A stretch of 64,000 nt of DNA from Diadema antillarum (GCF_040938485.1 NW_027271547.1:62001-126000), one strand, 5' to 3'. Positions 6,301 through 60,533 are shown, numbered from the stretch's first letter. Program-made: numbers and translations. The notes: generated by a model from the sequence alone, not told the origin.

Positions 6301-6344
6301 AGCCCAACGAGCAGCGTCAAACCAAAGCAGACGAAAGACTTCAT
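382..6344 (-). pseudogene. Ars: Arylsulfatase copy A, six exons, premature TAA in exon 5 (Q337* relative to copy B)
   Basis: Exons (minus): 6344-5984, 3580-3431, 2828-2716, 2387-2165, 1715-1551, 1076-382 (361+150+113+223+165+695=1707 nt), all with GT-AG introns. Signal peptide [18 protein letters not shown]; motifs [18 protein letters not shown] (formylglycine site), GKWHLG, SDHG. Codon at 1554-1552 reads TAA where B, C and D have CAA. The exon 5 acceptor is AAG where the other copies have CAG. Confidence 0.9.
3607..3630. repeat. G24 homopolymer at the 3' end of intron 1, copy A
   Basis: Read directly; poly(C) on the transcribed strand. Confidence 0.9.
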
Positions 6345-6404
6345 CCTGAGTTCCTTTCACCAGGAGCAAGACGAAAGATGCTTTACCCAAATAATTTCTG
6401 CAGA

Positions 6405-6411
6405 TTATATA
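6405..6411 (-). promoter_or_regulatory. TATA box of copy A (TATATAA)
   Basis: About 60 nt upstream of the ATG; conserved in position and context (CAGATTATATAGG on +) in copies A-E. Confidence 0.65.
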
Positions 6412-10065: not shown

Positions 10066-10553
10066 TGAAGTAAAGATTTTCGCGATGACAGTTTTAAAGA
10101 GCATGATAAACTATGAAAGAAGAAGTCATTTACTCTCTGGTGATTTTCTGCCATAAATGAATGACTGAGTCTACGCTCAGGACAGGATCAACAGTTGACT
10201 GACATGGATATTTTCTCCACAGGAAGAATTCTTTAATGCTTTTTCGATTTTCAATTCCTGGTCGTGGAAAACTGTATTAAAGGATTACCCTGACATACAG
10301 AAACGCACACCCTCTCAGACTTCCCTCATATTGACTGCATGACACAACCACTCATGTCACAGACAAACGTAATTATCTCAAAACGTTCGTGGCCGCACAG
10401 AGAGAAATCGCACGATCATGTCCTTCTCTCTCCAGTTTCTCTTTCTCCCCTCCTATCAGCATCTCCATTCGTTAGTTTTGCCATGTTACTTGACATATTC
10501 ACTCATGACTCTTCATGTCACGTAAATCATTGATTATGAGTATTGCATGTAAG

Positions 10554-10559
10554 TTTATT
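10554..10559 (-). terminator. Putative AATAAA polyadenylation signal of copy B (counterparts: A 101-106, D 34437-34442)
   Basis: AATAAA on the minus strand 270-305 nt after the stop codon, in homologous context in three paralogs. Confidence 0.45.
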
Positions 10560-10831
10560 TCTCCTTTGTGTTTCGTAAACATTTCACATTTTCCAGAGTT
10601 AATGATAAAAAAAAAATGCTCTTCGTTTTCAACGAATACAGCCCTACACCGTTTTCGTCTTTCTTCTTGCTTTTTATTACAAATGATACAGAGCATAGAA
10701 AAGAATGAAAAGATAGACCAATTGCAAAAGATAGACCAATTGCAACTGAAATTTCATTTCAATTGATTTAGAAGGATTTGGGTCATTCAGGAAGACATTC
10801 AACCGACACATTATTTGTTATTTCGTCTCAT

Positions 10832-13800: not shown

Positions 13801-14124
13801 CCGTTTGTCGACCCATTGGAATCACATCTCTAATAACAGTAATAGCTTTTGATTTTCCAAATTAGCAATTACATTAACAAATTTATTTGAGGCAAATGTT
13901 TTCAAAACGCGGTGACTGGATTTGACCACATGATGCTGCTTCGGTGAACTCACCGAGATGCCATTTGCCGATCATGCCGGTGGTGTAGCCGCTTGGCTTG
14001 ACGGCCTCGGCTATGGTGACTTCGCTCTTCGGCAAACCAGTCTTGGTCCATGGGAGGAAGACACGGGTGTTACCGTATACACCAGTCCTGATCGGGAGAC
14101 GACCTGTTGTTAAGAAGAGGGGGT

Positions 14125-14171
<47 letters not shown>

Positions 14172-16912: not shown

Positions 16913-16972
16913 CCTGAGTTCCTTTCACCAGGAGCAAGACGAAAGATGCCCTACCAAAATATTTTCTGCAGA

Positions 16973-16979
16973 TTATATA
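16973..16979 (-). promoter_or_regulatory. TATA box of copy B
   Basis: Same motif and spacing as in copy A. Confidence 0.65.
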
Positions 16980-17853
16980 GGGTTCCTTTCAATGACGTTT
17001 TCAATAAACCAATGCCTGTTCTGTTGTTATTTAAATGCTATTCCAGACACTCAAGGATATCAAGGGTTATTTGGTGTTTTTTTTTTCCTCGACAAAATAA
17101 TCATGGAACCTCTTCAATATTTTTGGAAGCTAGCACTGAGGCGTAACAAACAAATGAACTTTGTGAAATACCCCCATTGTTTGGTTGAAAACAGATAACC
17201 GTATTCAAATCCGTAAAGAGATGATGCAAAACCTCTACAAAGGCATGAAACGTTTTATACTGAATGTGTTACCCTTTTTTCGGCTCTCTCCGATCCTTTT
17301 GGGTGCATCAGCTTAAACATCGAGTCCATCGAGGGTTTTTGTGTATCTTATACTTTGGCTAAATCAGGAGGGGGAATTATGAGGTTTTTTGCCCCTAAGA
17401 GCTGAAAGAGCTAAATTATAGAAAGTAAGAATAAAAAAGGCGCGAAATACTTTCCTGCTTCATGGAGGCAAGCAATTGTAAGCGGCCTTGGGTATGCTGC
17501 GAAAGAACTTATCTTCTCGCATACAGCCAGGCCTCGAGGCAGTGCTATTTAAAGGCAAATTGTGTCTTTTTTTCTTGCAAACAGTTCATCAGATGTATGA
17601 TAATGGAACAAGATGACACGCTCACCAAAGGTGAGCCAACAGAGTTTGAACTACAACGAGATTGACCACTGTCTACTGACAATCCCCTGAAATCTTGCTC
17701 AGAAACCTTTCAATCATTTTCAGCAGATCAAAGCCCCAGTGGTTAAATGATGAAAATAGAAAATGATATTGACCTAAAGAAACAAACAGTCCAAGGACTA
17801 CAGAGAGGTCATACATATACATATACAACAATTCGACAGTTTTATATTGTCCT

Positions 17854-22626: not shown

Positions 22627-22799
22627 NNNNNNNNNNNNNNNNNNNNNNNNNNNNNNNNNNNNNNNNNNNNNNNNNNNNNNNNNNNNNNNNNNNNNNNNNN
22701 NNNNNNNNNNNNNNNNNNNNNNNNNNNNNNNNNNNNNNNNNNNNNNNNNNNNNNNNNNNNNNNNNNNNNNNNNNNNNNNNNNNNNNNNNNNNNNNNNNN
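22627..22799. other. Assembly gap (173 N)
   Basis: Run of n. Confidence 1.
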
Positions 22800-36397: not shown

Positions 36398-39300
36398 CTC
36401 TTTTTTCTGGAGGGGGGGGGGGGGTCACTACTATTTGACATCCTTTTCACGTTGCTATATGGAGTCGATATCATTAGACATGAGTACTATTTTTAGGTCT
36501 TACCGCGGCGTGATGAGCAGGAGAAGTCGTCCGATGAGAAGAGACTGGTGTGCATGTGAGCGAAGGCCATGTAGAGGAAGAACGGGTTCTGGACGTTGTC
36601 CTCGATAAAGCCGACAGCATCCTGAGTGAAAAGTTGGGTGAGTCCACGGTGCTCGAACGGCTGGGACACGAGGGTTGCGTTGTAGTAGAGGTAACAGACG
36701 TCGGTACGGGGGAAGTCCATATGGAGCTAAATCGGAAGGTGGATAGTATTTGGTCAGCCTCGCTCAGTGTCTGCCTAAACTGCCCAGTAACTTTATATAT
36801 AAATTTCGTGGCTTCTGATTTCTTGCCATGTAAACTGTTAGCAACATTCATTGTGGGGTTTTGTTTATTTCAGTTTCTCCATTTTCCGAAAGCCTTTCAG
36901 TTGGAAAGATTTTATAAGTAGCTCTTGAATAGGCAACACATTATCAAAGATTGAAGTTCGTGTTTACCTCTAAAGTTGGAAAATATTTTGTATTTTTTTC
37001 CTGATTTTGTACAGATTATGATATTAGCATGACAATTTCAATCTAATCTTTAATTTTGATAAAGGACCCACACAAAGTTACGGGAATATCAATCTAATTA
37101 GGGAAAATATGACTTTCTGCGGAAAAATTATTCCAGAATTTGATGGTATTGGAGGTATAAGTCAAACAGCAGGAAATGCATTGGGGATAAGGTCTTGCTA
37201 GTTTTTTTCTTGTTGTTTTTATTTTTCTGGTGACCAGAACAGAGTTCTTAAAGAATCCCATGTCCACATCAGAAAAAGGCGTATTTACCCCAGTGTCGTC
37301 ACATGCCCAGCTGTTGCCGAAGGGAAGGTTGTGGCCGACGAAGTCAAAGCCGTGGTTGTAGGGGAGATGAGCTCCGTCACTTGAAGTGTTTTCGTTGATC
37401 CCTGGCCATGATGGAAGAGATATATAGAGAGAAAGTGAGATGAATTCGTTTGCTTTAGATTTTTGTGTCTTCTTTGAGTACACAATGCTGCAGAGTGGTC
37501 ATCAAAATAAAAATAATAAACAAATCTAATGTCTATCCGTGAGCAATCCATGCTCTCAAAGACAACAACGTGCTGTTCAGGGATTGTCATTGCATGTTCT
37601 AGAAATCTTACGTTTTGTCCTGTTTATTTTGTTTCCTTTGATTATTTTCCTTTCTTCGCATGTATTCTGTTGTTGAGTAAATTAGCACAATCTTGTCTGA
37701 ATCGAGTGACCGTTTTTATCAACAATGATAACACACTGCAAGATTTAGGCCCAAGATTTCTAATTGATTGAAAGGAGCTTTAGCAAAATGTGTACTTATA
37801 AAGGTAAATGGGTCACCGTCGATCATTTCCGATTTCATTGAAAGCTCTTTGAAGCTTGACAACGAACGACAGACACATCGTAAAATGTATGTGTGTTCAT
37901 TTGCCCAGGGCGCGACATCAACTTTTTTTCACTGATGGTCCGTTCGGCCAAATAAAATGTGCAAAAATGAAAAAAAAAAAAAAATCGATGGCCCGAAATA
38001 TAGGCCTATGTACGGAAATAAACAGAAACATAACATTCAATTTTTGAATTTTGAGTGGTCGATCGATAGCCAGAAGAAGATAGCCTTTTTTGGGAATTTG
38101 GCAGCCCGACATTGATTTTTAGTGGTCCCGGGCCACCGGACCACCGTTAATGGCGCGCATTGATGTACCTATCACAATAATATGCAGGTCAGTGAGCTGA
38201 AATAAAGCTTAGGTGCTTTTGAAATGGTGCCATGTTTTTGTATGCTAATCATGCTATCGGCAAATAATGAATAGGGACCTGCCAGGTTTGACAAGAAACT
38301 TAATTGATTTTGTATTGTATACATTCAGATAGACCTGTAATATGATTAAAATAGAAAATATCACTGATCGTCGAAAATAGAGATTAGAAGTTAAGAAAGA
38401 GGTAGGTCACATTAGCGGCATTATTGAAGTCCTTAGGAACAAATGTAGACAATGCCCACAACCTGCTCATCGGCTCATTGGAATCAAACTTCAAATGGCA
38501 ATGGAGATTTTCAAACCGTTGCTTAAACTTTACAAGAGACAAACTGTTTTCAAAACTCGGTGACTGGACTTGACCACATGATGCTGCTTCGGTGAACTCA
38601 CCGAGATGCCATTTGCCGATCATGCCGGTGGTGTAGCCGCTTGCCTTGACGGCCTCGGCGATGGTGACTTCGCTCTTCGGCAAACCAGTCTTGGTCCATG
38701 GCAAGAAGACACGGGTGTTACCGTACACACCAGTCCTGATCGGGAGACGGCCTGTTGTAAGAATTCAGGAGAAGAGACAGAGTGGTTGATCAGGCTTGAT
38801 ATAATTGATACACTGCACCATCTTAACATGTGGAATGGAATAGTGGAAATGAAATTAATTTGAACTTTGAACTTTTTTAACTTTGAACTTTTTGAACTTT
38901 GAATCATTGGCTTTCATGGCGCCCACTGCACTAATAGGTAGAGATTTGATTTTGTACACGTTTTTATCAAATTCAAAAGAAAAATTGTGCATTATAATAG
39001 AGCAAACATATAGATATTTGAAGATATAGATGTATAAAAAAGATAAAGATTGATGTACAGATACATCGACATATTTCTCTATTATTGATCAGAATATGAA
39101 CAGTTCTAAACAGACCTCAACAGTCGAGATGTTATCATTGTAGTGGTTACATCTGAAAAAAAAAACCCGTGTCATCCAGCCTTAATGAGCAAGAAAACAC
39201 TAAGTCGGTATCGTTTACTTACCTGTCATGATGGCTGACCTACTGGGGGTGCAGACGGAGTCGCCGACGTATCCGTTGGTGAACCTCAAACCAGCTACGG

Positions 39301-39595
39301 CCAGCTCGTCGATGAAGCCGGCCTCCTGAGTGGGATGACCGTATGACGTCAGGTCTCCGTAGCCCATGTCGTCGGCAATCAGGAGGACGATGTTGGGCTT
39401 GTCCAAAGGATCCCGATCTGCGCCCGACGCCCCGCCGGTCCCCATGAGAATTTGCAGCCAGTTCGGATAGTCATCGCCGATCTGCTCATGGACAGCGTCG
39501 ATGACGCTCTGCGGGAGGCTCTGGGCAGTCGGGGAGCCCTGGGCATTGATAAGCCCGAAGAGCAGCGTCAAGCAAAAGCAGACGAGAGACTTCAT
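34746..39595 (-). CDS. Ars: Arylsulfatase copy D, six exons, 572 aa, intact
   Basis: Exons: 39595-39223, 38751-38602, 37401-37289, 36726-36504, 35988-35824, 35440-34746 (1719 nt). GT-AG introns, open frame, motifs intact; intron 1 is only 471 nt. Confidence 0.95.
37906..38162. mobile_element. hAT-like MITE in intron 2 of copy D (duplicate at ~42219-42475)
   Basis: Imperfect 17-bp TIR: CAGGGCGCGACATCAAC vs reverse complement of GTTAATGGCGCGCATTG. Absent from intron 2 of A-C; no clean TSD recognised. Confidence 0.5.
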
Positions 39596-39655
39596 CCTTA
39601 GTTCCTTTCACCAGAAGCACGATGAAAGATGCCCTACCCAAATATTTCCTGCAGA

Positions 39656-39662
39656 TTATATA
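39656..39662 (-). promoter_or_regulatory. TATA box of copy D (duplicated at 43969-43975 for E)
   Basis: Same motif and spacing as in copy A. Confidence 0.65.
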
Positions 39663-40066
39663 GGATTCCGTTCATCTGCGTTTCTCGTAAAACAATACCC
39701 TTTTCTATTTTTATTCAAATTTTATCCCAGATACCCAAGAATGCAATGGTTATTCGTCTTCTTTTTACCTCTTAACAATAATCATGTAATCTCTTCAATA
39801 TTACTGCCACTTGACATGGAGGCGTACCAAACGAATGGGCCGTGTGAAAAAGTCTCTTTGTTCACTTTAAAACAGATCGTCGTCATTGAATCTCAGAAGA
39901 GATGTCACGCATCTACGAAAGCACGAAGCGTTTCTTTTTATGTTTTTACTTCTCTATCCGATCGTTTTAGATGCAACAACTTGATTATCTAGTCCATCAC
40001 GTGTTACTAGCATCATATGCTTAAAGGAGGGGCGTTATGAGGTGGTTTGGCTCTAACTGGAAGAAC

Positions 40067-40455
40067 TTAAAGGGATGCTATAGTGTTGGTGGAAATGAGG
40101 ATTGGGCTCCTAATTTTTTTTTTTTTTGCGAGAAACCAAGACACCACTTGTGAAATGATATGGAACATGAAATTCTAAGAGGAATTCAAACTTTATTAAA
40201 TGAAAATCGTTTTTGGAATGGCCGAGATATCCAAAAACAAAGTAAAACAAAGTGCTGCTATTAAAAGGTGGGTCCTAAATTTTATTGGGATTGCGCTTGT
40301 TTTTTTTTATATCTCAGCCATTTCCAAACCAATTGTCATTAAATATGTTTCATAATAAAAACATGTTTTCATTATCCATGTTTCATAAGAGGACTCATCA
40401 GAAATTGTTAAAAACCTAAAGCTGGGTCTCAACCAAAACTATACGATAGTTTTAA
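40067..40455. mobile_element. TTAA-flanked MITE (TTAAAGGGATG... type; Kolobok/piggyBac-like target) upstream of copy D
   Basis: Degenerate TIRs (TTAAAGGGATGCTATAGTGTTGGT / ACCAAAACTATACGATAGTTTTAA). Homologous upstream regions of A, B and C lack it (empty site). Confidence 0.75.
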
Positions 40456-42914
40456 ATTCGAGAAACAGAAAATAGGCGTATTAAATGCATTTGCCTGCAT
40501 GTTTAAGGGAGGCAAGCAATTGTGAGAGGCCATTGATATCTGCGGAGGCCATTCAAAGACAAAATGTATTCATTTCTTGTAAACATGTACTCAGATGGAT
40601 GATAATGGAACAAATTACATCCCTGCATCGCATCTGGCGGTTTGAACTACCACATGATCTGCTCCTAACAATTGACATTTCCATGTTATCTTGCGTAGAA
40701 ACCTTTCAAAAATTTGAGCACATCAGTACCCCGGGGTTAATGATGAATATGGCATTGACCTGGAGATATGAATAAACAACCAAAAGTTGAAAAAAAGTCT
40801 TGTTCAGGAATGAAATGCATGGTGTCAACTTTATCTTTGTAACCAACAGCCTTTAAACATTCTGGGATACATCTGAGTTCATATTATTGTGTTTGATACT
40901 CATTAAATAATTATATTCTCTTACGTATGATGCACAATGTCAGAATTTCTAAGCATTGGCATATACAAAGTTCTGGCTTGACACTAACATTGAGAAAATG
41001 TCAGTCAAATTCTTACATGTTGCTCCTTTGATCTATTGTCAAGAGGCCTTGAAATATCCCCCTATAAAATACTTCCTGCACTTTTTTGTCAAGTTTATTG
41101 AAAAGATGGCAGATCTAGAACTTTCTTTTCTCTCATCCGAGATAATATTGATTTTGCCAAGTACCTAATCCTGCATTGTACACGAATCTCGTGATCAAGA
41201 CGCCAGTTTTGGCTGCACGACTTTGACGGCCTGCGGTGCGCTTTATTACCGGATATGTCTCGGAGTTTAAGGCGATTATAACATGGTTCGCTGTGTATCG
41301 ACCAACCGCAGGGTTCAATCAAGCCCACAAGGTGGCTGTTGTATGTTCAATTAACGAGACGTCACAAGGAAAGAACTTGTCCATTCTTCTACGTCATTGG
41401 CCATCGATATATGTTAATGCAACGCCCACATCATCACATGGGAAGTTTAATAGGCAGGTCGACTCCTAGCTGCATCAATGCGTGTTTCATGCCTGTCACG
41501 CCCTGGATAAAATTAGTAGTCCGTTTTATACCAGCGGCAAAGATATCTCGAAATCGTGTGTATTCACTCTGCATAAGTAGCCTCCTTTCCCCCTATACAC
41601 CAGTTATATTTTAGTGTTCTGTTTTGTTTTCTTTTGTGATTATAAGATAGGACGGAATTGCGTGAAGATATTGATATATTCAGGTATAGATCTCGTAGGC
41701 ATGTATATGTGTGTTCAATAATAACAACTAAAATATATAGAGAGAAAGTGAGATGAATTCGTTTGCTTTAGATTTTTGTGTCTTCTTTGAGTACACAATG
41801 CTGCAGAGTGGTCATCAAAATAAAAATAATAAACAAATCTAATGTCTATCCGTGAGCAATCCATGCTCTCAAAGACAACAACGTGCTGTTCAGGGATTGT
41901 CATTGCATGTTCTAGAAATCTTACGTTTTGTCCTGTTTATTTTGTTTCCTTTGATTATTTTCCTTTCTTCGCATGTATTCTGTTGTTGAGTAAATTAGCA
42001 CAATCTTGTCTGAATCGAGTGACCGTTTTTATCAACAATGATAACACACTGCAAGATTTAGGCCCAAGATTTCTAATTGATTGAAAGGAGCTTTAGCAAA
42101 ATGTGTACTTATAAAGGTAAATGGGTCACCGTCGATCATTTCCGATTTCATTGAAAGCTCTTTGAAGCTTGACAACGAACGACAGACACATCGTAAAATG
42201 TATGTGTGTTCATTTGCCCAGGGCGCGACATCAACTTTTTTTCACTGATGGTCCGTTCGGCCAAATAAAATGTGCAAAAATGAAAAAAAAAAAAAAATCG
42301 ATGGCCCGAAATATAGGCCTATGTACGGAAATAAACAGAAACATAACATTCAATTTTTGAATTTTGAGTGGTCGATCGATAGCCAGAAGAAGATAGCCTT
42401 TTTTGGGAATTTGGCAGCCCGACATTGATTTTTAGTGGTCCCGGGCCACCGGACCACCGTTAATGGCGCGCATTGATGTACCTATCACAATAATATGCAG
42501 GTCAGTGAGCTGAAATAAAGCTTAGGTGCTTTTGAAATGGTGCCATGTTTTTGTATGCTAATCATGCTATCGGCAAATAATGAATAGGGACCTGCCAGGT
42601 TTGACAAGAAACTTAATTGATTTTGTATTGTATACATTCAGATAGACCTGTAATATGATTAAAATAGAAAATATCACTGATCGTCGAAAATAGAGATTAG
42701 AAGTTAAGAAAGAGGTAGGTCACATTAGCGGCATTATTGAAGTCCTTAGGAACAAATGTAGACAATGCCCACAACCTGCTCATCGGCTCATTGGAATCAA
42801 ACTTCAAATGGCAATGGAGATTTTCAAACCGTTGCTTAAACTTTACAAGAGACAAACTGTTTTCAAAACTCGGTGACTGGACTTGACCACATGATGCTGC
42901 TTCGGTGAACTCAC

Positions 42915-43908
42915 CGAGATGCCATTTGCCGATCATGCCGGTGGTGTAGCCGCTTGCCTTGACGGCCTCGGCGATGGTGACTTCGCTCTTCGGCAAACCA
43001 GTCTTGGTCCATGGCAAGAAGACACGGGTGTTACCGTACACACCAGTCCTGATCGGGAGACGGCCTGTTGTAAGAATTCAGGAGAAGAGACAGAGTGGTT
43101 GATCAGGCTTGATATAATTGATACACTGCACCATCTTAACATGTGGAATGGAATAGTGGAAATGAAATTAATTTGAACTTTGAACTTTTTTAACTTTGAA
43201 CTTTTTGAACTTTGAATCATTGGCTTTCATGGCGCCCACTGCACTAATAGGTAGAGATTTGATTTTGTACACGTTTTTATCAAATTCAAAAGAAAAATTG
43301 TGCATTATAATAGAGCAAACATATAGATATTTGAAGATATAGATGTATAAAAAAGATAAAGATTGATGTACAGATACATCGACATATTTCTCTATTATTG
43401 ATCAGAATATGAACAGTTCTAAACAGACCTCAACAGTCGAGATGTTATCATTGTAGTGGTTACATCTGAAAAAAAAAACCCGTGTCATCCAGCCTTAATG
43501 AGCAAGAAAACACTAAGTCGGTATCGTTTACTTACCTGTCATGATGGCTGACCTACTGGGGGTGCAGACGGAGTCGCCGACGTATCCGTTGGTGAACCTC
43601 AAACCAGCTACGGCCAGCTCGTCGATGAAGCCGGCCTCCTGAGTGGGATGACCGTATGACGTCAGGTCTCCGTAGCCCATGTCGTCGGCAATCAGGAGGA
43701 CGATGTTGGGCTTGTCCAAAGGATCCCGATCTGCGCCCGACGCCCCGCCGGTCCCCATGAGAATTTGCAGCCAGTTCGGATAGTCATCGCCGATCTGCTC
43801 ATGGACAGCGTCGATGACGCTCTGCGGGAGGCTCTGGGCAGTCGGGGAGCCCTGGGCATTGATAAGCCCGAAGAGCAGCGTCAAGCAAAAGCAGACGAGA
43901 GACTTCAT
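42915..43908 (-). pseudogene. Ars: Partial arylsulfatase copy E: exons 1-2 only, duplicate of copy D (or an alternative 5' end of D)
   Basis: Exon 1 at 43908-43536 and exon 2 at 43064-42915 match copy D at offset +4313. No exon 3 follows; the duplication junction at ~41733 falls in intron 2. Confidence 0.85.
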
Positions 43909-44379
43909 CCTTAGTTCCTTTCACCAGAAGCACGATGAAAGATGCCCTACCCAAATATTTCCTGCAGATTATATAGGATTCCGTTCATCTGCGTTTCTCG
44001 TAAAACAATACCCTTTTCTATTTTTATTCAAATTTTATCCCAGATACCCAAGAATGCAATGGTTATTCGTCTTCTTTTTACCTCTTAACAATAATCATGT
44101 AATCTCTTCAATATTACTGCCACTTGACATGGAGGCGTACCAAACGAATGGGCCGTGTGAAAAAGTCTCTTTGTTCACTTTAAAACAGATCGTCGTCATT
44201 GAATCTCAGAAGAGATGTCACGCATCTACGAAAGCACGAAGCGTTTCTTTTTATGTTTTTACTTCTCTATCCGATCGTTTTAGATGCAACAACTTGATTA
44301 TCTAGTCCATCACGTGTTACTAGCATCATATGCTTAAAGGAGGGGCGTTATGAGGTGGTTTGGCTCTAACTGGAAGAAC

Positions 44380-44769
44380 TTAAAGGGATGCTATAGTGTT
44401 GGTGGAAATGAGGATTGGGCTCCTAATTTTTTTTTTTTTTTGCGAGAAACCAAGACACCACTTGTGAAATGATATGGAACATGAAATTCTAAGAGGAATT
44501 CAAACTTTATTAAATGAAAATCGTTTTTGGAATGGCCGAGATATCCAAAAACAAAGTAAAACAAAGTGCTGCTATTAAAAGGTGGGTCCTAAATTTTATT
44601 GGGATTGCGCTTGTTTTTTTTTATATCTCAGCCATTTCCAAACCAATTGTCATTAAATATGTTTCATAATAAAAACATGTTTTCATTATCCATGTTTCAT
44701 AAGAGGACTCATCAGAAATTGTTAAAAACCTAAAGCTGGGTCTCAACCAAAACTATACGATAGTTTTAA
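44380..44769. mobile_element. Duplicate of the TTAA MITE within the 4.3-kb duplication
   Basis: Same sequence as 40067-40455 apart from poly-T length. Confidence 0.75.
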
Positions 44770-47700
44770 ATTCGAGAAACAGAAAATAGGCGTATTAAAT
44801 GCATTTGCCTGCATGTTTAAGGGAGGCAAGCAATTGTGAGAGGCCATTGATATCTGCGGAGGCCATTCAAAGACAAAATGTATTCATTTCTTGTAAACAT
44901 GTACTCAGATGGATGATAATGGAACAAATTACATCCCTGCATCGCATCTGGCGGTTTGAACTACCACATGATCTGCTCCTAACAATTGACATTTCCATGT
45001 TATCTTGCGTAGAAACCTTTCAAAAATTTGAGCACATCAGTACCCCGGGGTTAATGATGAATATGGCATTGACCTGGAGATATGAATAAACAACCAAAAG
45101 TTGAAAAAAAGTCTTGTTCAGGAATGAAATGCATGGTGTCAACTTTATCTTTGTAACCAACAGCCTTTAAACATTCTGGGATACATCTGAGTTCATATTA
45201 TTGTGTTTGATACTCATTAAATAATTATATTCTCTTACGTATGATGCACAATGTCAGAATTTCTAAGCATTGGCATATACAAAGTTCTGGCTTGACACTA
45301 ACATTGAGAAAATGTCAGTCAAATTCTTACATGTTGCTCCTTTGATCTATTGTCAAGAGGCCTTGAAATATCCCCCTATAAAATACTTCCTGCACTTTTT
45401 TGTCAAGTTTATTGAAAAGATGGCAGATCTAGAACTTTCTTTTCTCTCATCCGAGATAATATTGATTTTGCCAAGTACCTAATCCTGCATTGTACACGAA
45501 TCTCGTGATCAAGACGCCAGTTTTGGCTGCACGACTTTGACGGCCTGCGGTGCGCTTTATTACCGGATATGTCTCGGAGTTTAAGGCGATTATAACATGG
45601 TTCGCTGTGTATCGACCAACCGCAGGGTTCAATCAAGCCCACAAGGTGGCTGTTGTATGTTCAATTAACGAGACGTCACAAGGAAAGAACTTGTCCATTC
45701 TTCTACGTCATTGGCCATCGATATATGTTAATGCAACGCCCACATCATCACATGGGAAGTTTAATAGGCAGGTCGACTCCTAGCTGCATCAATGCGTGTT
45801 TCATGCCTGTCACGCCCTGGATAAAATTAGTAGTCCGTTTTATACCAGCGGCAAAGATATCTCGAAATCGTGTGTATTCACTCTGCATAAGTAGCCCCCT
45901 TTCCCCCTATACACCAGTTATATTTTAGTGTTCTGTTTTGTTTTCTTTTGTGATTATAAGATAGGACGGAATTGCGTGAAGATATTGATATATTCAGGTA
46001 TAGATCTCGTAGGCATGTATATGTGTGTTCAATAATAACAACTAAAATCATTTACAAACGCACCAGGCTATATTGTTCATGCTTGCGTTTACAAGTTTCT
46101 TACGAAGTGGTAATCGTAGAGTTACGTAGCAGATGGAATATAATTTGAAGTTGTAGATGCAAGTTATACTGGCTGACAATCTAAATTCTATGTTTCTTAT
46201 CCAGTTCAGAATTATTCAAGGCATTACAATCAGATTTGGTTAGATGATAAAGGGAATGGAAAACAATAGTCGCACTGCATTCTTCACGCTTAACAAGCTT
46301 GCTTTTTTGTAGGCTCAAACATATTTCTCTGGCATTTTACTTAGATTCAAACTTTGCTAAATTTACCATCTTGTTCTATGTAAGTGATATCTTACGGTAA
46401 GTCCAAGCTGAACATCATTTTTTTTTTTTGGTGTTTACATATTATACATTTATAATTACGAAATACGAAAACAAATTTAAATTTGAAATGTGACAGTCAT
46501 CTTAAAGAATACCTGAGGTAAGGAATTACTATTCGTGATCATGAGCACAGAGGCAATCAGACTTAATGAAAAGAATGGAAATGGTGAGGGATTGAAGAAA
46601 AAATGCAGCTTTTTATCAAAATACACTCACTACACACAGCTGTGTATCTCTCGCCTGCTACCGACTGCCACGAGCACACACACACATTGCGTAGACTCAC
46701 GCATGCATACGCGCGAAAAAGGACTATGAGCGGGCATGAAACCGAAGTCAATCAGCGTCGCTTACTGTGTACTTATATTTAGCACGCACAGTCCAGACAT
46801 TTTGCTGCCAAAATCAACAGAAACGTTTCTTCTACTTACTACTCTTATAATATGACTTGATAGCTGCCCATGGATTTGGTGAATGACTCTCCTCGTCATT
46901 CACTTGCATTTTTGTAAAATAGCAAACGAAGCAATGAGCCACAAAGAACGTTGTATTCATAAGCTCGTATTTTCCTTCATTATAAATGTATTAATCATTT
47001 CAAACTGCTGTGCTTTTTTGTTACTATATAGAAGGAAAAAGTTTCAAACAACAAAAATATCACATAGACGTATACGGTAACGATGAAATGAGACAAGGAA
47101 AACGTTATAGTACAAGGGTCCCTTAAAGTTAAATTCTAAGTAATATTTTAAAAGATAAAGATGAATTACACGTGACCCTGAAATGAGTCACAAAAATGAA
47201 ACAAACGATAAGGTCTTACAGATGTAGAGTTCTAAGAAAAAGACTTTGAACGAGAATGAGATAATAGGAAAGAGAGTTAGGATAGTGGTAACAACTCTGG
47301 AAATATTCTTAAAATCGGCGAACCACTACGTAGTATCCCGTGACGTTATCTCGGGAAAGAGTTTTAAGACAATAAACAAGTGTCACGCTTCCATGGCGTG
47401 CACTGTACATAGGCCTAATTGTTCGCTTGCTTGTCGACTGACTTCAAAATTCGTGGTTTTCGGGGGGGGGGGGTTGCGATAGTATGAACAGTTGTCTATC
47501 TAGCAACACAGTAACGATAGAAGGGGTGACTTTTACACGGATTCTGACATTGGAGAACTGTCAGACAGAGAGGGTCAGACATAAAAGGAATCACCATCAA
47601 GAGAATGGGACATCCCGCCACATTATTTTGAGCCAAAAGCTGATGCAGCTGCCTAAGACGAAAAAGATGCTGGTTCTGTCTCTGTGACTCGGAAAGAAGG

Positions 47701-51416: not shown

Positions 51417-51594
51417 NNNNNNNNNNNNNNNNNNNNNNNNNNNNNNNNNNNNNNNNNNNNNNNNNNNNNNNNNNNNNNNNNNNNNNNNNNNNNNNNNNNN
51501 NNNNNNNNNNNNNNNNNNNNNNNNNNNNNNNNNNNNNNNNNNNNNNNNNNNNNNNNNNNNNNNNNNNNNNNNNNNNNNNNNNNNNNNNNNNNNN
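51417..51594. other. Assembly gap (178 N)
   Basis: Run of n. Confidence 1.
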
Positions 51595-53445: not shown

Positions 53446-55288
53446 AAACAACAAAAAAATCATTGAAAAATATAGGTAAAAACCGGAATGCAAAGCAACA
53501 ACAATTTTGGAGAAAACAAAAACAAATCTTGGATATTTCAAGATTTCACTTTTTTTTTTAATTAGGAAAATTGTGAATGATATTTGGTTGTTGAATTTGT
53601 CTAATTAATTCTAAAATTACTAAGTTCAAAAAATAAGATAAAGAAATTCTGTTAATTGAGTAATCTTTGTGCCATTGCTCCAAACATGACCTACATTGTC
53701 CTATGTCATTGAAGTTTGAGTTGACAGAAAATTCTCATTTCCCCTTTTAGTTTCCAACTTTGCTTTTGTTTGAGGTTATGAAGAGATAAAGAGAACGTAA
53801 AACATATATTTCCTATTTTATTCATGTCTCTCATTGTGTTAAACTGGTCTTTTGTTGTCTGTCACTATTATCTTGAAGGACATTTGCAAATTTTTAATTT
53901 TGTGCCTTGGAGGGCAAAAAACCGATGTGTTCTCTCATACGTAACTTTCCCCTTGTATTATGTTCCTAGCTTGATAGCCAACATTAACTTTAATATGGTA
54001 CATAACGCATTCAGTCAGTCCGCAGCGTGAGCGAAAACGCATGTATTTATTCAAGTCGTATGCACGGCTGAGCGGTGCTTGCATACGTAATGAGCAGATA
54101 CATGATCATGAATAAATCCGTGTAGAACGAGTATTTCTCGTCAGTTTTCGACACTTTTAGTATCGACTGAAAGAGAAAACATAAGCAAATATGCTCATGA
54201 TCAAAATAAACGGAAAAGAAGAATAAAGAATATCAAAATCCCTCTCGAAGTTCGGTATTGTATTCAAAAAATATTCCTTCACGTTTGACGCCAAAAAATT
54301 AACCTGAAATTTTTCATGCCCCTCTAAAATATGGTGAAGACTATGTCCGCTAAGGTATATAGTATCACAATAAGGGCACGTTTTCCCATCTTCATTTCAA
54401 TACGGGTCAGGAACTAGCAAAATTCAGAGACATGTCTAGCGTCGAGTTTAAAAAGATTATCCTCGCATTCGCACCGGAATTCCGGGTCTGTGATTGGTCG
54501 AAATCTGTCGCAAGACGCGGCGTGTCGCATTGCGTAGTATCCATTGGCTGCTGACTCAATGCTGTGAGTTTTAAATGTTAGGTTCCAAATTGTGATCGAA
54601 TTTTCACTCTCTGTACAAAACTTGAACTTTACACAGGAACCAATGATGTGTATGTGAGTGTGCACTTACAATGACCCTGAACAATGGACCTGGCTGCCAC
54701 CTGTCCCGAGCTCTGCTGCAAGGCACATGAATGCTTAATCAATTATTCATGTGGATTGCCCCGAGCACTGCTAGTCTGAATTCTTGACACAGGGTGAAAT
54801 GCATGCACATGAAAGAAGTAAGCACATGTTTCCATGTGCTTGCACACACCACATTTCAGAATGAACAAAGACTAGCTGCGATAGTGGAATTCCTCATGAA
54901 ACATTCCAATCCTGGCCATTGTCCACGACCATTGTCTGGGTATCAACAACACATTCCACGCGTGTTCATTCACTACCCCACTTCCAGTAAGAAAACATAA
55001 TTTGCCTTGTTTTCAACAGGAAAATTCACAACCTTAAAAATGGTGCCCCTCTTCGTTTTTTAATTGATCATACTCGCTCAAGTTTCACGATTGTGAAATC
55101 GAAGAAATTACGGAGATCTATTTTCAATACCAGTCAGGAACTAGCAAAACATCAAACTATGATCTAAAAGCTTCTTGAACATTGGCAAAATAATCGTTTA
55201 CTTTGATGCTAAAATGGACTACTATATTGACATCAAAAATAGGGAAATTAGGTATCAAATTAATGAGCATAATCAGCTCTATAACTTA

Positions 55289-56748
55289 CAGTCAGTCCGC
55301 AGCGTGTGCGATAATGAGGCACGAACGACAATTTTATTCAGAATCACGTTTACGCAGTTTGTGCCCTTGAGACTGACGAGATTTCGCGATACTTTGCGAG
55401 AGTTTTTGCAGAGGTCGCAACAACAGCTTTCATAGCTTTCGCAGTGCATTGTTTGATCCAGAATGGTTAGGTAAGTTATAGAGCTGATTATGCACATTAA
55501 TTTGATACCTAATTTCCCTATTTTTGATGTCAATATAGTAGTCCATTTTAGCATCAAAGTAAACGATTATTTTGCCAATGTTCAAGAAGCTTTTAGATCA
55601 TAGTTCGATGTTTTGCTAGTTCCTGACTGGTATTGAAAATAGATCTCCGTAATTTCTTCGATTTCACAATCGTGAAACTTGAGCGAGTATGATCAATTAA
55701 AAAACGAAGAGGGGCACCATTTTTAAGGTTATGAATTTTCCTGTTGAAAACAAGGCAAATTACGTTTTCTTACTGGAAGTGGGGTAGTGAATGAACACTC
55801 GTGGAATGTGTTGTTGATACCCAGACAATGGTCGTGGACAATGGCCAGGATTGGAGTGTTTCATGAGGAATTCCACTATCGCAGCTAGTCTTTGTTCATT
55901 CTGAAATGTGGTGTGTGCAAGCACATGGAAACATGTGCTTACTTCTTTCATGTGCATGCATTTCACCCTGTGTCAAGAATTCAGACTAGCAGTGCTCGGG
56001 GCAATCCACATGAATAATTGATTAAGCATTCATGTGCCTTGCAGCAGAGCTCGGGACAGGTGGCAGCCAGGTCCATTGTTCAGGGTCATTGTAAGTGCAC
56101 ACTCACATACACATCAATGGTTCCTGTGTAAAGTTCAAGTTTTGTATAGAGAGTGAAAATTCGATCACAATCTGGAACCTAACATTTAAAACTCACAGCA
56201 TTGAGTCAACAGCCAATGGATACTACGCAATGCGACACGCCGCGTCTTGCGACAGATTTCGACCAATCACAGACCCGGAATTCTGGTGCGAATGCGAGGA
56301 TAATCTTTTTAAACTCAACGCCAGACATGTCTCTGAATTTTGCTAGTTCCTGACCCGTATTGAAATGAAGATGGGAAAACGTGCCCTTATTGTGATACTA
56401 TATACCTTAGCGGACATAGTCTTCACCATATTTTAGAGGGGCATGAAAAATTTCAGGTTAATTTTTTGGCGTCAAACGTGAAGGAATATTTTTTGAATAC
56501 AATACCGAACTTCGAGAGGGATTTTGATATTCTTTATTCTTCTTTTCCGTTTATTTTGATCATGAGCATATTTGCTTATGTTTTCTCTTTCAGTCGATAC
56601 TAAAAGTGTCGAAAACTGACGAGAAATACTCGTTCTACACGGATTTATTCATGATCATGTATCTGCTCATTACGTATGCAAGCACCGCTCAGCCGTGCAT
56701 ACGACTTGAATAAATACATGCGTTTTCGCTCACGCTGCGGACTGACTG
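55289..56748 (-). mobile_element. Nested copy (element 2) of the same ~1460-bp DNA transposon, reverse orientation
   Basis: Both TIRs present; sequence is the reverse complement of 56772-58230; flanked by CTTA and TTGA. Confidence 0.92.
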
Positions 56749-56771
56749 TTGACCCAGGATGGTTGGGTAAG

Positions 56772-58230
56772 CAGTCAGTCCGCAGCGCGAGCGAAAACGC
56801 ACGTATTTATTCAAGTCGTATGCACGGCTGAGCGGTGCTTGCATACGTAATGAGCAGATACATGGTCATGAATAAATCCGTGTAGAACGAGTATTTCTCG
56901 TCAGTTTTCGACACTTTTAGTATCGACTGAAAAAGAAAACATAAGCAAATATGCTCATGATCAAAATAAACAGAAAAGAAGAATATAGAATGTCAAAATC
57001 CCTCTCGAAGTTCGGTATTGTATTCAAAAATATTCCTGCACGTTTGACGCCAAAAAAATAACCTGAAATCGTTCATGCCCCTCTAAAATATGGTGAAGAC
57101 TATGTCCGCTAAAGTATATAGTATCACAATAAGGGCACGTTTTCCCATCTTCATTTCAATACGGGTCAGGAACTAGCAAAATTCAGAGACATGTCTGGCG
57201 TTGAGTTTAAAAAGATTATCCTCGCATTCGCACCAGAATTCCGGGTCTGTGATTGGTCGAAATCTGTCGCAAGACGCGGCGTGTCGCATTGCGTAGTATC
57301 CATTGGCTGTTGACTCAATGCTGTGAGTTTTAAATGTTAGGTTCCAGATTGTGATCGAATTTTCACTCTCTATACAAAACTTGAACTTTACACAGGAACC
57401 ATTGATGTGTATGTGAGTGTGCACTTACAATGACCCTGAACAATGGACCTGGCTGCCACCTGTCCCGAGCTCTGCTGCAAGGCACATGAATGCTTAATCA
57501 ATTATTCATGTGGATTGCCCCGAGCACTGCTAGTCTGAATTCTTGACACAGGGTGAAATGCATGCACATGAAAGAAGTAAGCACATGTTTCCATGTGCTT
57601 GCACACACCACATTTCAGAATGAACAAAGACTAGCTGCGATAGTGGAATTCCTCATGAAACACTCCAATCCTGGCCATTGTCCACGACCATTGTCTGGGT
57701 ATCAACAACACATTCCACGAGTGTTCATTCACTACCCCACTTCCAGTAAGAAAACGTAATTTGCCTTGTTTTCAACAGGAAAATTCATAACCTTAAAAAT
57801 GGTGCCCCTCTTCGTTTTTTAATTGATCATACTCGCTCAAGTTTCACGATTGTGAAATCGAAGAAATTACGGAGATCTATTTTCAATACCAGTCAGGAAC
57901 TAGCAAAACATCGAACTATGATCTAAAAGCTTCTTGAACATTGGCAAAATAATCGTTTACTTTGATGCTAAAATGGACTACTATATTGACATCAAAAATA
58001 GGGAAATTAGGTATCAAATTAATGTGCATAATCAGCTCTATAACTTACCTAACCATTCTGGATCAAACAATGCACTGCGAAAGCTATGAAAGCTGTTGTT
58101 GCGACCTCTGCAAAAACTCTCGCAAAGTATCGCGAAATCTCGTCAGTCTCAAGGGCACAAACTGCGTAAACGTGATTCTGAATAAAATTGTCGTTCGTGC
58201 CTCATTATCGCACACGCTGCGGACTGACTG
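56772..58230 (+). mobile_element. Nested copy (element 3) of the same DNA transposon, forward orientation
   Basis: Both TIRs present; 1459 bp; flanked by TAAG and TCAA; no long ORF. Confidence 0.92.
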
Positions 58231-59679
58231 TCAAACAATGCACTGTGAAAGCTATGAAAGTTGTTATTGCGACCTCTGCAAAAACTCTCGCAAAGTATCG
58301 CGAAATCTCGTCAGTCTCAAGGACACAAACTGCGTAAACGTGATTCTGAATAAAATTGTCGTTCGTGCCTCATTATCGCACACGCTGCGGACTGACTGCA
58401 TTGAATTTCACCCATTTTTTTTTTAGAAAATATGAACTCGAAAAAAGTATTTACTTTTTTCTGAGTGCATATACATATAATATACATGTAGTTATTTTTT
58501 TTTCAACTTGAGGGTTGAAAGGGTATGGTGTTGAAAAACAACAGCAAAACCATTTCCTTTAGGAAACTTCATAGGAAGTCTCACCATACTTCGAGGGAGC
58601 TGAATCTGAAAGTGGTTGATGCAAAATTTACGTCCTTGAGGGTTTTGAGATTTTCAAGATTTTTGGTGGTCATTTTGGCGGAGATCTGTTATCTATTTAT
58701 TTTTTCTTATCTTGATTTTCTATTCAAATCGTTAGCCGCATGTATCTTTGTTTAATTTACTGTTGTGCCACTTTGTAAGTCAGGTTTTAAACTGAAAGGG
58801 CTACCCTGTGAAAATAAAAGGGAATGAACAAATTAAAAAATAAATAGATGCAAGAGTAGCATCATCCATGTTCGGATTCAGCAACCTCGAAAAAAAAAGA
58901 ATTATTAATTCATTTTTAATCTATATAATATTATATTCAATTTACTCTCAAGGATGAAAGAGTTGCCTCACACAAACTCGGAGTGATCACCTTCGAAATA
59001 AGCTAAAACCATCATTTTTTTTCCAATTCTCAATATTATAAGGAAATGCATGGGAATTTCCTATTCTTCCGGCCATGTTCAATGTCTAAAAATCCTCAAA
59101 AAGTAAAAAAAAGAAAAAAAAAGAAAATGCACAATCCAGATTCAGATACAGCACCCTAGGAAGAGGGTTGCCTATTAAAACAAAACAAAGCAAAGCAAAA
59201 CAAAAACAAAAACATTGGACGGACGGAAATCAAGGTTCATTCATGGCACCGAGACTAATATGATTATTTTCTATAACTCATCCCTTTATAATTCTGCTTT
59301 TGGGTGGTGTACGGAAAAGTGACTACTACTCTGTAATCTTTGGGACTAATAGCAGATTTAGTGACACGATTTGGTTCCCTCGTTAACAGTATATGCTACA
59401 ATTCAGAAGCGTCCTAATCGCTGTAATCTTCGCCTCCTTACAAAAAAAAAAAAAAAAAAAAACTTTTATGACAGTCAAATTCAATGACTTCAAGGACCTA
59501 TTATACCTCTTAACGAATCTTCTTAACTAGGAATTTACCGCAGACAAAACTCTCGGGCACACAAAGGAGGGTGTTCTGTGATTCGGGTCTCGGGGGGCTT
59601 CATCCTCCTGAGCTGCAGAATGAAAGGGGCTGGTGTTTACCAAAATCCAAGAGTAAGTCGAGAGCCATGGGTGTGGTGG

Positions 59680-59687: not shown

Positions 59688-59746
59688 CAAGCAACCCCCT
59701 CTCGGTCCTCTTATTGTCCTTGAGCGCTCCTCCGCACTCAAACAGA

Positions 59747-60092
59747 ATGTATGCCCTCCTAGCCAGTATCCTCTTTTTGTCGTCCCTGGTCTCGGCCCAG
59801 GACAACTCGGGCGACCTGCCGCCCAGCATCATCGAGGCGCTCGCCAATCACCAGGACAACCCCGAGCTCCTGGCGCTCCTGCTCCAAAATGGCCGCTACC
59901 GTGACACTCGCGAAAAGCCCAACATTGTTCTGCTCGTCGCCGACGACATGGGCGTCGGCGACCTGTCGGTTTACGGTCATCCGACTCAGGAGCCCGGCTA
60001 CATCGACCAGTTTGCAGGGGAGAGCATGAGGTTTACCAACGCATATGTCGGGGACTCCGTTTGCACACCAAGCCGATCTGCTTTCATGACAG
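59747..60092 (+). CDS. Ars: Arylsulfatase copy F, exon 1 (divergent paralog; the rest lies beyond the window)
   Basis: ATG at 59747: [18 protein letters not shown]...[10 protein letters not shown]...[28 protein letters not shown]...[12 protein letters not shown]. Phase-1 donor G|GTAGG at 60092/60093, the same intron position as copies A-E. No exon 2 found before 64000. Confidence 0.9.
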
Positions 60093-60533
60093 GTAGGAAG
60101 AAAAAAAAATGCTTTATTACAAGATCAGGAGAATACAGGAAAAAAATCATAGAATAATTGGTGGATAAAGAACGGCAGAGAGTTAAGTAGACAAACTTAT
60201 AGACAGAGGGTTAATAGATAAAGATGGAAACACAAATGAAGATATCAGTAGATTATAAGATAGACAGGAGGGTTTATACTTCGACAGATACAGTAAGATA
60301 CACTAAGATATCAGAAAGCTAATGAATAAACCGTTTTCGTAATGTATTCAAGTTTATCGGACAGGTATATGGGACAAACGTAATGTGCTTCATTCCAGGG
60401 AACAAAGTGACGAGCAAGGCTATTCCATTAACCTGCTCTTCTTCAATGAAATTCAATTGATGGGATCCAGTCTTCATATATTACTCGTTGCTATGTCGGT
60501 CAAGCCTCGAACTAGGATTTCAGGGTGTCATTA

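What the first reader, a model, noticed from the sequence alone, without database searches (positions are those of the whole stretch)
54008..58402. Triple-nested DNA transposon with a flipped 23-bp core: footprint of alternative-end (hybrid-element / double-Ds-like) transposition
Seen: CATT-[el1 left 54012-55288 ending CTTA]-[el2 reverse 55289-56748]-TTGA cccaggatggttggg TAAG (56749-56771)-[el3 forward 56772-58230]-[TCAA... el1 right 58231-58398]-CATT. The 23-bp spacer is the reverse complement of CTTA-15 nt-TCAA, the piece missing from el1; el2 and el3 carry the homologous uninterrupted CTTAcctaaccattctggaTCAA. Rebuilding el1 gives 1277+15+168=1460 bp, equal to the intact copies. The two internal TSDs (CTTA, TCAA) are each split across opposite strands. 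Established: this geometry (two inverted copies bracketing an inverted segment, TSDs swapped) is the product of P-element hybrid element insertion, Ac/Ds alternative transposition and intramolecular replicative inversion. Inference: one resident copy transposed 19 bp away using ends from sister chromatids. That is more parsimonious than two separate insertions plus recombination, and fits el2 and el3 being nearly identical over their right ~1 kb. The result is a ~2.9-kb palindrome with a 23-bp loop, 1.35 kb upstream of Ars-F, and potentially a chromosome-breaking structure.
Basis: partly seen in the sequence, partly recalled or inferred. Interest (0 to 1): 0.88.

Follow-up and report, generated by a model that had tools for sequence, protein, structure and literature searches.

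The report
Nested transposon trio with flipped core
Three copies of a young 1.46-kb DNA transposon sit inside one another 1.3 kb upstream of an arylsulfatase gene, with a 23-bp piece of the host copy turned around between two of them; this is a known type of transposon rearrangement, and the sequence cannot decide whether one aberrant jump or two jumps plus recombination produced it.

Summary
The layout is CATT | el1 left | el2 reversed | 23-bp spacer | el3 forward | el1 right | CATT. The window has six TIR ends and no others. The spacer is the reverse complement of the piece missing from el1. Both inner 4-bp duplications are split across strands.

Three things are new. First, two other individuals carry an empty-site allele, so el1 is a recent, polymorphic insertion with a true 4-bp TSD. 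Second, el2 is a perfect mosaic: positions 1-343 equal el1 at 13 sites and positions 427-1460 equal el3 at 20 sites, with no private change (P = 3.5e-9). Homologous exchange has therefore acted in this nest. Third, the spacer partly pairs with itself, so the palindrome's effective loop is 7 nt.

The geometry fits hybrid-element or sister-chromatid transposition. It fits two inverted insertions followed by arm-to-arm recombination equally well. The published criterion, identical versus chimeric copies, gives a mixed answer here.

No public run was listed for the nested junction, and no spanning reads were available. I favour a one-step aberrant transposition followed by a short conversion from el1 into el2 (about 0.45). 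Two insertions plus a flip get about 0.3, and an assembly artefact about 0.12.

This is a known kind of rearrangement and of moderate interest.

The parts
54008..54011 (.). left copy of el1's 4-bp target site duplication (CATT)
   Evidence: The empty-site contigs in runs X1 and X4 carry a single CATT (joint 54011->58416).
54012..55288 (+). el1 left part, element positions 1-1277, ends in CTTA
   Evidence: It is 98% identical to el3 and 99% complementary to el2 (I1).
55289..56748 (-). el2, a full 1460-nt copy in reverse orientation. It is a mosaic: positions 427-1460 (window 55289-56322) equal el3 and positions 1-343 (window 56406-56748) equal el1.
   Evidence: 33 informative sites, none private to el2; P = 3.5e-9 for the perfect block pattern.
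56322..56406 (-). interval holding the single switch point of the el2 mosaic (element positions 343-427)
56749..56771 (-). flipped 23-bp core: the reverse complement of CTTA + 15 nt + TCAA of el1. It carries one copy of each inner TSD.
   Evidence: Its 15-nt core lacks the two el2/el3-specific alleles and so is of el1 origin. It pairs internally and leaves a 7-nt loop.
56772..58230 (+). el3, a full 1459-nt copy in forward orientation
58231..58398 (+). el1 right part, element positions 1293-1460, starts with TCAA
   Evidence: D3: 98% to the right end of el3.
58399..58402 (.). right copy of el1's TSD (CATT)
59714..60157 (+). neighbouring gene: first coding exon of an arylsulfatase (signal peptide and CTPSR sulfatase motif). 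It is not part of the nest.
   Evidence: ORF; PF00884, E = 1.1e-14.

Best explanation
This is a real, very recent nest of a high-copy, non-autonomous cut-and-paste DNA transposon: 1.46 kb, 16-nt perfect TIRs and a 4-bp TSD. Step 1 (shown): el1 inserted at CATT, and the site is still empty in other individuals. Step 2 (inferred): an el3-type copy inserted into el1 at either CTTA or TCAA. Step 3 (inferred, favoured route): transposase joined the right end of that copy on one sister chromatid with the left end on the other. It inserted the pair 19 bp away. This duplicated the copy in inverted orientation, flipped the 23-bp stretch and split both TSDs across strands. That is the hybrid-element or sister-chromatid type of alternative transposition. 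Step 4 (the pattern is shown, the mechanism is inferred): the inner 343-426 nt of el2, next to the centre of the new palindrome, were overwritten from the inverted host copy el1. The route was gene conversion, perhaps after a break at the palindrome centre or at el2's left end. This left el2 as an el1/el3 mosaic and put 13 mismatches into the centre of an otherwise perfect 2.9-kb palindrome.
For: All three novel junctions fall exactly at TIR termini, with matching 4-bp duplications. An empty allele occurs in X1 and X4, and the element has high copy depth. The core is flipped and of el1 type. el2 equals el3 over 1117 nt, where el1 differs at 20 sites. That result has a chance of about e^-20 at that divergence, as expected for sister copies. 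el2 has no private change, so all events are recent. The single switch point and block pattern give P = 3.5e-9. The alleles 288T and 300T, shared by el1 and el2, appear in no laid contig of four runs, where C/C holds all the depth. This points to a local donor. The predicted HEI outcome is given in PMC2775673 Fig. S1A and PMC3744419. Arm-to-arm conversion is far commoner than arm-to-arm crossover in a studied palindrome, 56 events against 3 (PMC3723533). That makes 'one transposition plus a conversion' cheaper than 'two insertions plus a crossover plus a conversion'.
Against: The HEI criterion of identical flanking copies is not met in the inner 343 nt, so an extra event must be assumed. A local hop plus a flip gives the same sequence. 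The superfamily and its transposase are unknown, so its capacity for alternative transposition is untested. The nested allele is seen only in this assembly: no run was listed for the central junction, and the four laid runs show only the empty allele or other family copies. The conversion needs homology that ends within the 16-nt TIR on one side, which is short for ordinary homologous repair. Both left-end variant types occur as multi-copy variants in the family. el2 could therefore in principle have been a pre-existing recombinant family member.
Confidence: 0.45

Rival explanations
1. Two ordinary insertions followed by ectopic recombination. One copy inserted at CTTA in reverse orientation and one at TCAA in forward orientation, the second perhaps by a local hop of the first. 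A crossover between the two inverted copies then flipped the 23-bp core and exchanged the TSDs. A separate conversion from el1 made el2 mosaic.
For: The outcome is the same as HEI (PMC2775673). Homologous exchange demonstrably acted in this nest. Inversions by arm-to-arm crossover are documented (PMC3723533). The two target sites lie at mirror positions of a small quasi-palindrome, so both could be preferred targets.
Against: It needs one more event than the one-step route, all within a time too short for any private mutation in el2. Crossovers are much rarer than conversions between palindrome arms, 3 against 56. A single crossover between the two inner copies cannot produce the el1-type tract in el2 (worked through). 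Reciprocal chimerism of el3 cannot be shown.
Confidence: 0.3
2. Assembly artefact. The nest, or at least the mosaic of el2, comes from a wrong path through near-identical repeats, a fold-back chimeric read, or polishing with mis-mapped reads.
For: No public run was listed for the central junction (only 2 sampled words). Laid contigs show only the empty allele and other copies. A mosaic with no private site is also what read mis-assignment among repeats would give. The family is high copy.
Against: A fold-back or missed-adapter chimera has its centre at a random point and identical arms. Here all junctions sit exactly at TIR ends with consistent 4-bp duplications, and the inner arms differ at 13 sites. 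Polishing with family-wide reads would pull sites to the majority alleles, yet el2 carries the minority alleles of its two neighbours. The same window resolves a 4.3-kb tandem duplicate of 99.95% identity. That suggests long reads, which would span 4.4 kb.
Confidence: 0.12
3. Intramolecular replicative inversion. This is nick-and-paste with a Shapiro-type intermediate, as in bacterial IS and Tn3-type elements, rather than exchange of ends between sister chromatids.
For: The product geometry is identical: a duplicated element in inverted orientation, an inverted intervening segment and a split new TSD (derived, plus established knowledge of replicative transposition).
Against: The polymorphic empty site carries a single clean CATT, which fits an ordinary insertion. 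Replicative transposition is not established for eukaryotic TIR elements (my own knowledge). It still needs the later conversion.
Confidence: 0.05

Closest known systems
P-element hybrid element insertion (Gray, Tanaka and Sved 1996; Preston, Sved and Engels 1996; as summarised in PMC2775673 and PMC3744419)
   Same: It gives two copies in inverted orientation around an inverted flanking segment. The old and new TSDs are each split between the copies. The target lies very close to the donor.
   Different: P elements make 8-bp TSDs and the events were observed de novo. Here the TSD is 4 bp, the transposase is unknown and the event is only inferred. The two copies are not identical in their inner 343 nt.
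Maize Ac/Ds alternative transposition and double-Ds (sister-chromatid and reversed-ends transposition; PMC3744419)
   Same: One copy sits in inverted orientation inside another copy of the same family (el2 in el1), as in double-Ds. The rearrangement is bounded by TIR ends and TSDs.
   Different: Ac/Ds is a hAT element with an 8-bp TSD. Sister-chromatid transposition there uses ends of two linked elements and is governed by hemimethylation. No chromosome breakage or transposase activity is shown here.
Galileo-mediated inversion 2z3 in Drosophila buzzatii by ectopic recombination (Delprat et al. 2009, PMC2775673)
   Same: There are inverted copies with exchanged TSDs. The block pattern of variable sites with one switch point reveals a chimera: 33+20 sites there, 13+20 here.
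   Different: There both copies are reciprocal chimeras of two parental types, and the inversion spans megabases. Here only el2 is visibly chimeric, its second parent is the host copy el1 rather than el3's partner, and the inverted piece is 23 bp.
Arm-to-arm gene conversion and inversion in large palindromes (human Y P6, PMC3723533; palindrome fragility review PMC7999016)
   Same: Inverted repeats exchange sequence by conversion and, more rarely, flip their spacer by crossover. Long, similar arms with a short spacer are prone to breaks.
   Different: Those arms are 100 kb in scale and are homogenised. Here a 1.46-kb arm was made less like its partner near the centre by a third copy.
Intramolecular replicative inversion of bacterial IS/Tn elements
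   Same: The end product has the same topology.
   Different: It is a prokaryotic replicative mechanism. There is no evidence that this eukaryotic family replicates during transposition.

Membership tests
Class II TIR (cut-and-paste) DNA transposon, non-autonomous | Terminal inverted repeats at both ends of each copy | tested here: met
   There are six ends with the same 16-nt perfect terminus, extending to 26 nt at 92%.
Class II TIR (cut-and-paste) DNA transposon, non-autonomous | Target site duplication of fixed length, with a single copy in the empty site | tested here: met
   CATT flanks el1. The empty allele in X1 and X4 has one CATT. CTTA and TCAA are each present twice.
Class II TIR (cut-and-paste) DNA transposon, non-autonomous | Multiple dispersed copies in the genome | tested here: met
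   Contig depth over the element is hundreds to thousands, against 6-8 for the single-copy flank. Many different flanks appear as loose ends at the TIRs.
Class II TIR (cut-and-paste) DNA transposon, non-autonomous | Transposase gene (for autonomy) or assignment to a superfamily | tested here: not met
   Only 83-154-aa ORFs are present, with no Pfam family above cut-off. No autonomous relative was found. A 4-bp TSD fits Sola-type elements (PMC3627910) and some other superfamilies, but this stays unassigned.
Hybrid element insertion / sister-chromatid alternative transposition product | Two copies in opposite orientation flanking an inverted segment | tested here: met
Hybrid element insertion / sister-chromatid alternative transposition product | Donor-site TSD and new-target TSD each split between the two copies, on opposite strands | tested here: met
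   CTTA at 55285-55288 pairs with TAAG at 56768-56771. TTGA at 56749-56752 pairs with TCAA at 58231-58234.
Hybrid element insertion / sister-chromatid alternative transposition product | The two flanking copies are identical (criterion of PMC2775673) | tested here: inconclusive
   They are identical over 1117 nt but differ at 13 sites in the inner 343 nt, where el2 equals el1. This is compatible only if a later conversion is assumed.
Hybrid element insertion / sister-chromatid alternative transposition product | Event seen to arise in one step in the presence of transposase | not testable with these tools
   It needs crosses or a transposition assay.
Inversion by ectopic recombination between inverted TE copies | Exchanged TSDs on two inverted copies | tested here: met
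   This feature is shared with HEI.
Inversion by ectopic recombination between inverted TE copies | Both copies are reciprocal chimeras of the two parental insertions | tested here: inconclusive
   el2 is chimeric, but between el1 and el3 types. No parental references exist to judge el3.
Inversion by ectopic recombination between inverted TE copies | Parental (unflipped) double-insertion arrangement exists or existed | not tested
   Only the empty allele was seen in other individuals.
Double-Ds-like chromosome-breaking structure | One copy inserted in inverted orientation into another copy of the same element | tested here: met
   el2 lies within el1.
Double-Ds-like chromosome-breaking structure | Transposase-dependent chromosome breakage at the site | not testable with these tools
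   It needs cytogenetic or genetic assays.

The most novel reading that the evidence does not exclude
The nest is a natural, single-locus record of two linked processes. The first is a hybrid-element (sister-chromatid) transposition by a still unclassified 4-bp-TSD transposon family of a marine animal. The second is repair of the resulting near-perfect 2.9-kb palindrome from a third, inverted copy, which de-symmetrised its centre. If so, alternative transposition would extend beyond the P and hAT superfamilies. The locus would also show how new TE palindromes become tolerable.
Probability: 0.35. Interest if true: 0.5.

Novelty: new member of a known kind. Interest (0 to 1): 0.33.

Why it matters
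Exchanged-TSD structures are the main sequence footprint used to argue that transposases, rather than homologous recombination, reshape genomes. This locus is a compact example: a 23-bp inversion, intact ends and a polymorphic site. It shows how weak that inference is when the copies are young. It also shows that local conversion among nested copies can blur the one criterion meant to separate the two routes. The allele places a 2.9-kb near-palindrome with a 7-nt effective loop 1.3 kb upstream of an arylsulfatase gene. It could serve as a natural test case for palindrome stability if it segregates in the population. It adds no new kind of mechanism.

Tried and rejected
1. I searched public runs with the 71-nt central junction (56725-56795). 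None was listed, but only 2 words were sampled, so this is uninformative rather than negative.

2. I laid Logan contigs of four runs on 53900-58500. This gave the empty allele and family-level variants. No listed contig bridged the inner junctions, because repeats break short-word contigs.

3. I scanned metagenome contigs with the 16-nt terminus. It returned 120 loci, and none matched the element beyond the 16-mer, so they are chance hits. No family copies, extra TSDs or autonomous element came from it.

4. Rfam found nothing on the nest. Pfam found nothing above cut-off on the element's ORFs. The 154-aa ORF at 57962-58426 exists only because two right ends abut.

5. An atlas search with the sulfatase exon returned only generic sulfatase clusters and gave no hint of the host taxon.

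6. I rejected a fold-back or missed-adapter artefact. The junctions lie at TIR ends and the inner arms differ.

7. I rejected alternative parses of the 4.4 kb, since no other nesting order fits the segment ends.

8. I rejected four one-event routes to the mosaic. These were a single crossover between el2 and el3, a crossover between el1 and el2, macro-transposition using el1's left end with el3's right end, and sister-chromatid use of those two ends. Each was worked through on paper and predicts a structure different from the one seen.

9. The maximum chi-square test on el2 versus el1 alone was weak (132 of 2000 permutations), because the el1-specific sites cluster near the right end. The test against el3 (4 of 2000) and the exact block probability carry the argument.
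Full report
WHAT IS THERE

The stretch 54008-58402 was read directly, run through the repeat finder and dissected by script.
- A 4-bp CATT lies at 54008-54011.
- A forward element fragment of 1277 nt follows and ends in CTTA (54012-55288).
- A full copy in reverse orientation comes next (el2, 55289-56748, 1460 nt).
- A 23-bp spacer lies at 56749-56771.
- A full forward copy follows (el3, 56772-58230, 1459 nt).
- The last 168 nt of an element, starting with TCAA, lie at 58231-58398.
- A second CATT lies at 58399-58402.

The terminus CAGTCAGTCCGCAGCG occurs six times in the 64-kb window, only at these six ends. By chance 0.11 occurrences are expected, and none of 100 shuffles reached six. BLAST of el3 against the window finds no further copy.

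The reverse complement of the spacer supplies the piece missing from el1, and the rebuilt el1 is 1460 nt long. That 23-mer matches the uninterrupted one of el2 and el3 at 20 of 23 positions. In forward orientation it matches at only 12 of 23. A public contig from uninterrupted family copies reads CTAACCATCCTGG-G-TCAA at this place (loose end at 58230). It differs from the flipped core at one position. It also lacks the two alleles specific to el2 and el3. The core is therefore a piece of el1, turned around. CTTA and TCAA are each present twice, and the two members of each pair lie on opposite strands.

IS IT MORE THAN AN ASSEMBLY PRODUCT?

I laid the contigs of four public runs on 53900-58500. 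Two runs of the same coded organism from different studies (X1, X4) each hold a contig that joins 54011 to 58416. Their depths are 6.4 and 8.0, with 66 or more letters on either side. This is an empty site with one CATT. It sits on a somewhat divergent haplotype: two substitutions next to the site and further differences at 58448 and 58454. So el1 is a polymorphic insertion and its 4-bp TSD is genuine.

Depth over the element is hundreds to thousands. The TIR ends show many different loose flanks. The family is therefore high copy and was recently active.

No listed contig bridges the inner junctions. A search of the run index with the 71-nt central junction listed no run, but only two words were sampled.

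Several points argue against an artefact. All three novel junctions sit exactly at TIR termini with consistent 4-bp duplications. The inner arms of the palindrome differ at 13 sites, which a fold-back or missed-adapter chimera would not show. The same window resolves a 4316-bp tandem duplicate of 99.95% identity, which points to long reads that would easily span 4.4 kb. I put an artefact at about 0.12.

THE NEW FACT: EL2 IS A MOSAIC

Aligning the rebuilt el1, el2 and el3 gives 33 variable sites. At the first 13 sites (positions 17-343), el2 equals el1 and differs from el3. At the last 20 sites (positions 427-1385), el2 equals el3 and differs from el1. No site is private to el2. There is a single switch between positions 343 and 427 (window 56322-56406).

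The chance of such a perfect block order is 3.5e-9. The maximum chi-square for el2 against el3 peaks at position 343, and 4 of 2000 permutations reach it.

The laid contigs allow a rough polarity.
- At positions 427, 432, 465, 893, 1143 and 1255 the el1 alleles sit in the deepest contigs, so the alleles shared by el2 and el3 are the minority type.
- At positions 288 and 300 the el1/el2 alleles (T, T) appear in no laid contig of any run, where C, C holds all the depth.
- At positions 268 and 301 el3 carries the odd allele.
- Other left-end alleles of both types occur as multi-copy variants.

I read this as moderate evidence that el2 took its left end from its neighbour el1, and its remainder from the same source as el3.

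In window terms the el1-type tract starts at, or within 16 nt of, the centre of the el2/el3 palindrome and runs outward for 343-426 nt.

HOW IT MOST LIKELY AROSE

Two routes give this geometry, and the literature says so explicitly. Delprat et al. 2009 (PMC2775673) state that hybrid element insertion with both ends taken from one site on sister chromatids gives an inversion flanked by two inverted copies. They state that this is 'strikingly similar' to ectopic recombination between two inverted copies. The difference is that the copies are identical under the first route and chimeric under the second. Zhang et al. 2013 (PMC3744419) summarise the alternative transposition reactions of P and Ac/Ds.

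The criterion gives a mixed answer here. The copies are identical over 1117 nt, with a chance of about e^-20 at the el1-el3 divergence. They differ at 13 sites in the inner 343 nt.

I worked through single-event alternatives on paper: a crossover between el2 and el3, a crossover between el1 and el2, and use of el1's left end with el3's right end on the same or on sister chromatids. None yields both the observed junctions and the el1-type tract. Every route therefore needs a separate homologous exchange from el1 into el2.
- The one-step route needs four events: the el1 insertion, a nested insertion, an alternative transposition 19 bp away, and a conversion.
- The two-insertion route needs five events: the same, but with a second insertion plus a crossover in place of the alternative transposition.

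In the one palindrome where both have been counted, conversions outnumber inversions 56 to 3 (PMC3723533). Seeing one conversion therefore does not make a crossover likely in the same short time, and el2 has had no time to gain a single private change.

On this basis I favour the one-step route (about 0.45) over two insertions plus a flip (about 0.3). This is a weighing of priors, not a test. A local hop followed by a flip leaves exactly the same letters.

WHY THE CONVERSION MIGHT SIT WHERE IT DOES

This part is inference. Folded as single-stranded DNA, the centre forms an almost perfect hairpin. The spacer pairs with itself through ACCCA/TGGGT and leaves a 7-nt loop (-181 kcal/mol for 301 nt, z = -41).

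Long, similar arms with a short spacer are the most break-prone palindromes. Inverted Alu repeats stall replication with a 12-bp spacer but not with a 52-bp spacer in eukaryotic cells (PMC7999016). A break at the centre, or a single-end transposase cut at el2's left terminus, would expose el2's left end. The inverted host copy el1 lies 1.9 kb away as a template.

The result is 13 mismatches within 343 nt of the centre, which should make the palindrome less prone to extrusion. One weakness is that homology on the centre side ends within the 16-nt TIR.

WHAT THE ELEMENT IS

It has no transposase. Its ORFs are 83-154 aa with no Pfam family above cut-off, and it matches no Rfam family. No autonomous relative could be fetched: the metagenome scan with the terminus returned only chance 16-mers.

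A 4-bp TSD without a fixed sequence (CATT, CTTA, TCAA) is reported for Sola-type elements (PMC3627910). From my own memory it also occurs in a few other superfamilies. I leave the superfamily unassigned.

The neighbouring gene is an arylsulfatase (PF00884), whose likely ATG lies about 1.35 kb downstream. No effect on it was tested.

COMPARISON AND VERDICT

In what it works like, the nest matches P-element hybrid element insertion and maize double-Ds and sister-chromatid transposition. It equally matches Galileo-type ectopic recombination. Membership in either class cannot be settled, because the discriminating feature is inconclusive here.

'Chromosome-breaking' is untested.

This is a new instance of a known kind of transposon rearrangement. 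Its compactness, its youth and the clean three-way mosaic make it interesting, but it is not a new mechanism.

Interest is 0.33.

Noticed in passing
window 37420-41734 and 41733-46048: A 4316-bp head-to-tail tandem duplicate of 99.95% identity, with 1 mismatch and 1 gap. It is either very young or a false duplication of the assembly. I used it only as a hint that the assembly rests on long reads.
   Followed up: partly
window 5-7258 versus 10461-17819: Older duplicated blocks of 2.6 kb (92.7%) and 4.7 kb (90.8%), with further 0.7-0.8-kb repeats at 24.1, 34.7, 0.3 and 10.8 kb. This fits a tandem array of paralogous arylsulfatase gene units.
   Followed up: no
window 22627-22799 and 51417-51594: Two runs of N, 173 and 178 letters long. 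The nearer one is 2.4 kb upstream of the nest.
   Followed up: no
window 54395-54422, 55122-55149 and the matching places in el2 and el3: Each element carries two 28-nt direct repeats 727 nt apart (TTTCAATAC..GTCAGGAACTAGCAAAA). One holds CAGTCAG, the first seven letters of the TIR. They may be internal transposase-binding sites or the remains of an older nested end.
   Followed up: no
window 54516-54669 (element positions about 505-660): This segment has 5-50 times the contig depth of the rest of the element in three runs. All four runs show the same loose end at 54570, and three of them share 54623. The element seems to share a module with another, more abundant repeat.
   Followed up: no
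window 58403-58415 versus the empty-site contigs of X1 and X4: The empty allele reads TATTTTCACCCA where the filled allele has GAATTTCACCCA just after the TSD. These are probably haplotype SNPs, since the contig also differs at 58448 and 58454. An excision footprint is not excluded.
   Followed up: partly
window 56749-56771, and el3 58045-58067: The two nested target sites lie at mirror positions of a small quasi-palindrome in the host element (CTTACCCA - 7 nt - TGGGTCAA). el1's own flank also holds CACCCA 6 nt after its TSD. This may reflect a target preference, but with three sites it may be chance.
   Followed up: no
window 57962-58426: A 154-aa ORF runs through the abutting right ends of el3 and el1. 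It is a by-product of the 168-nt tandem repeat and has no family match above cut-off.
   Followed up: yes
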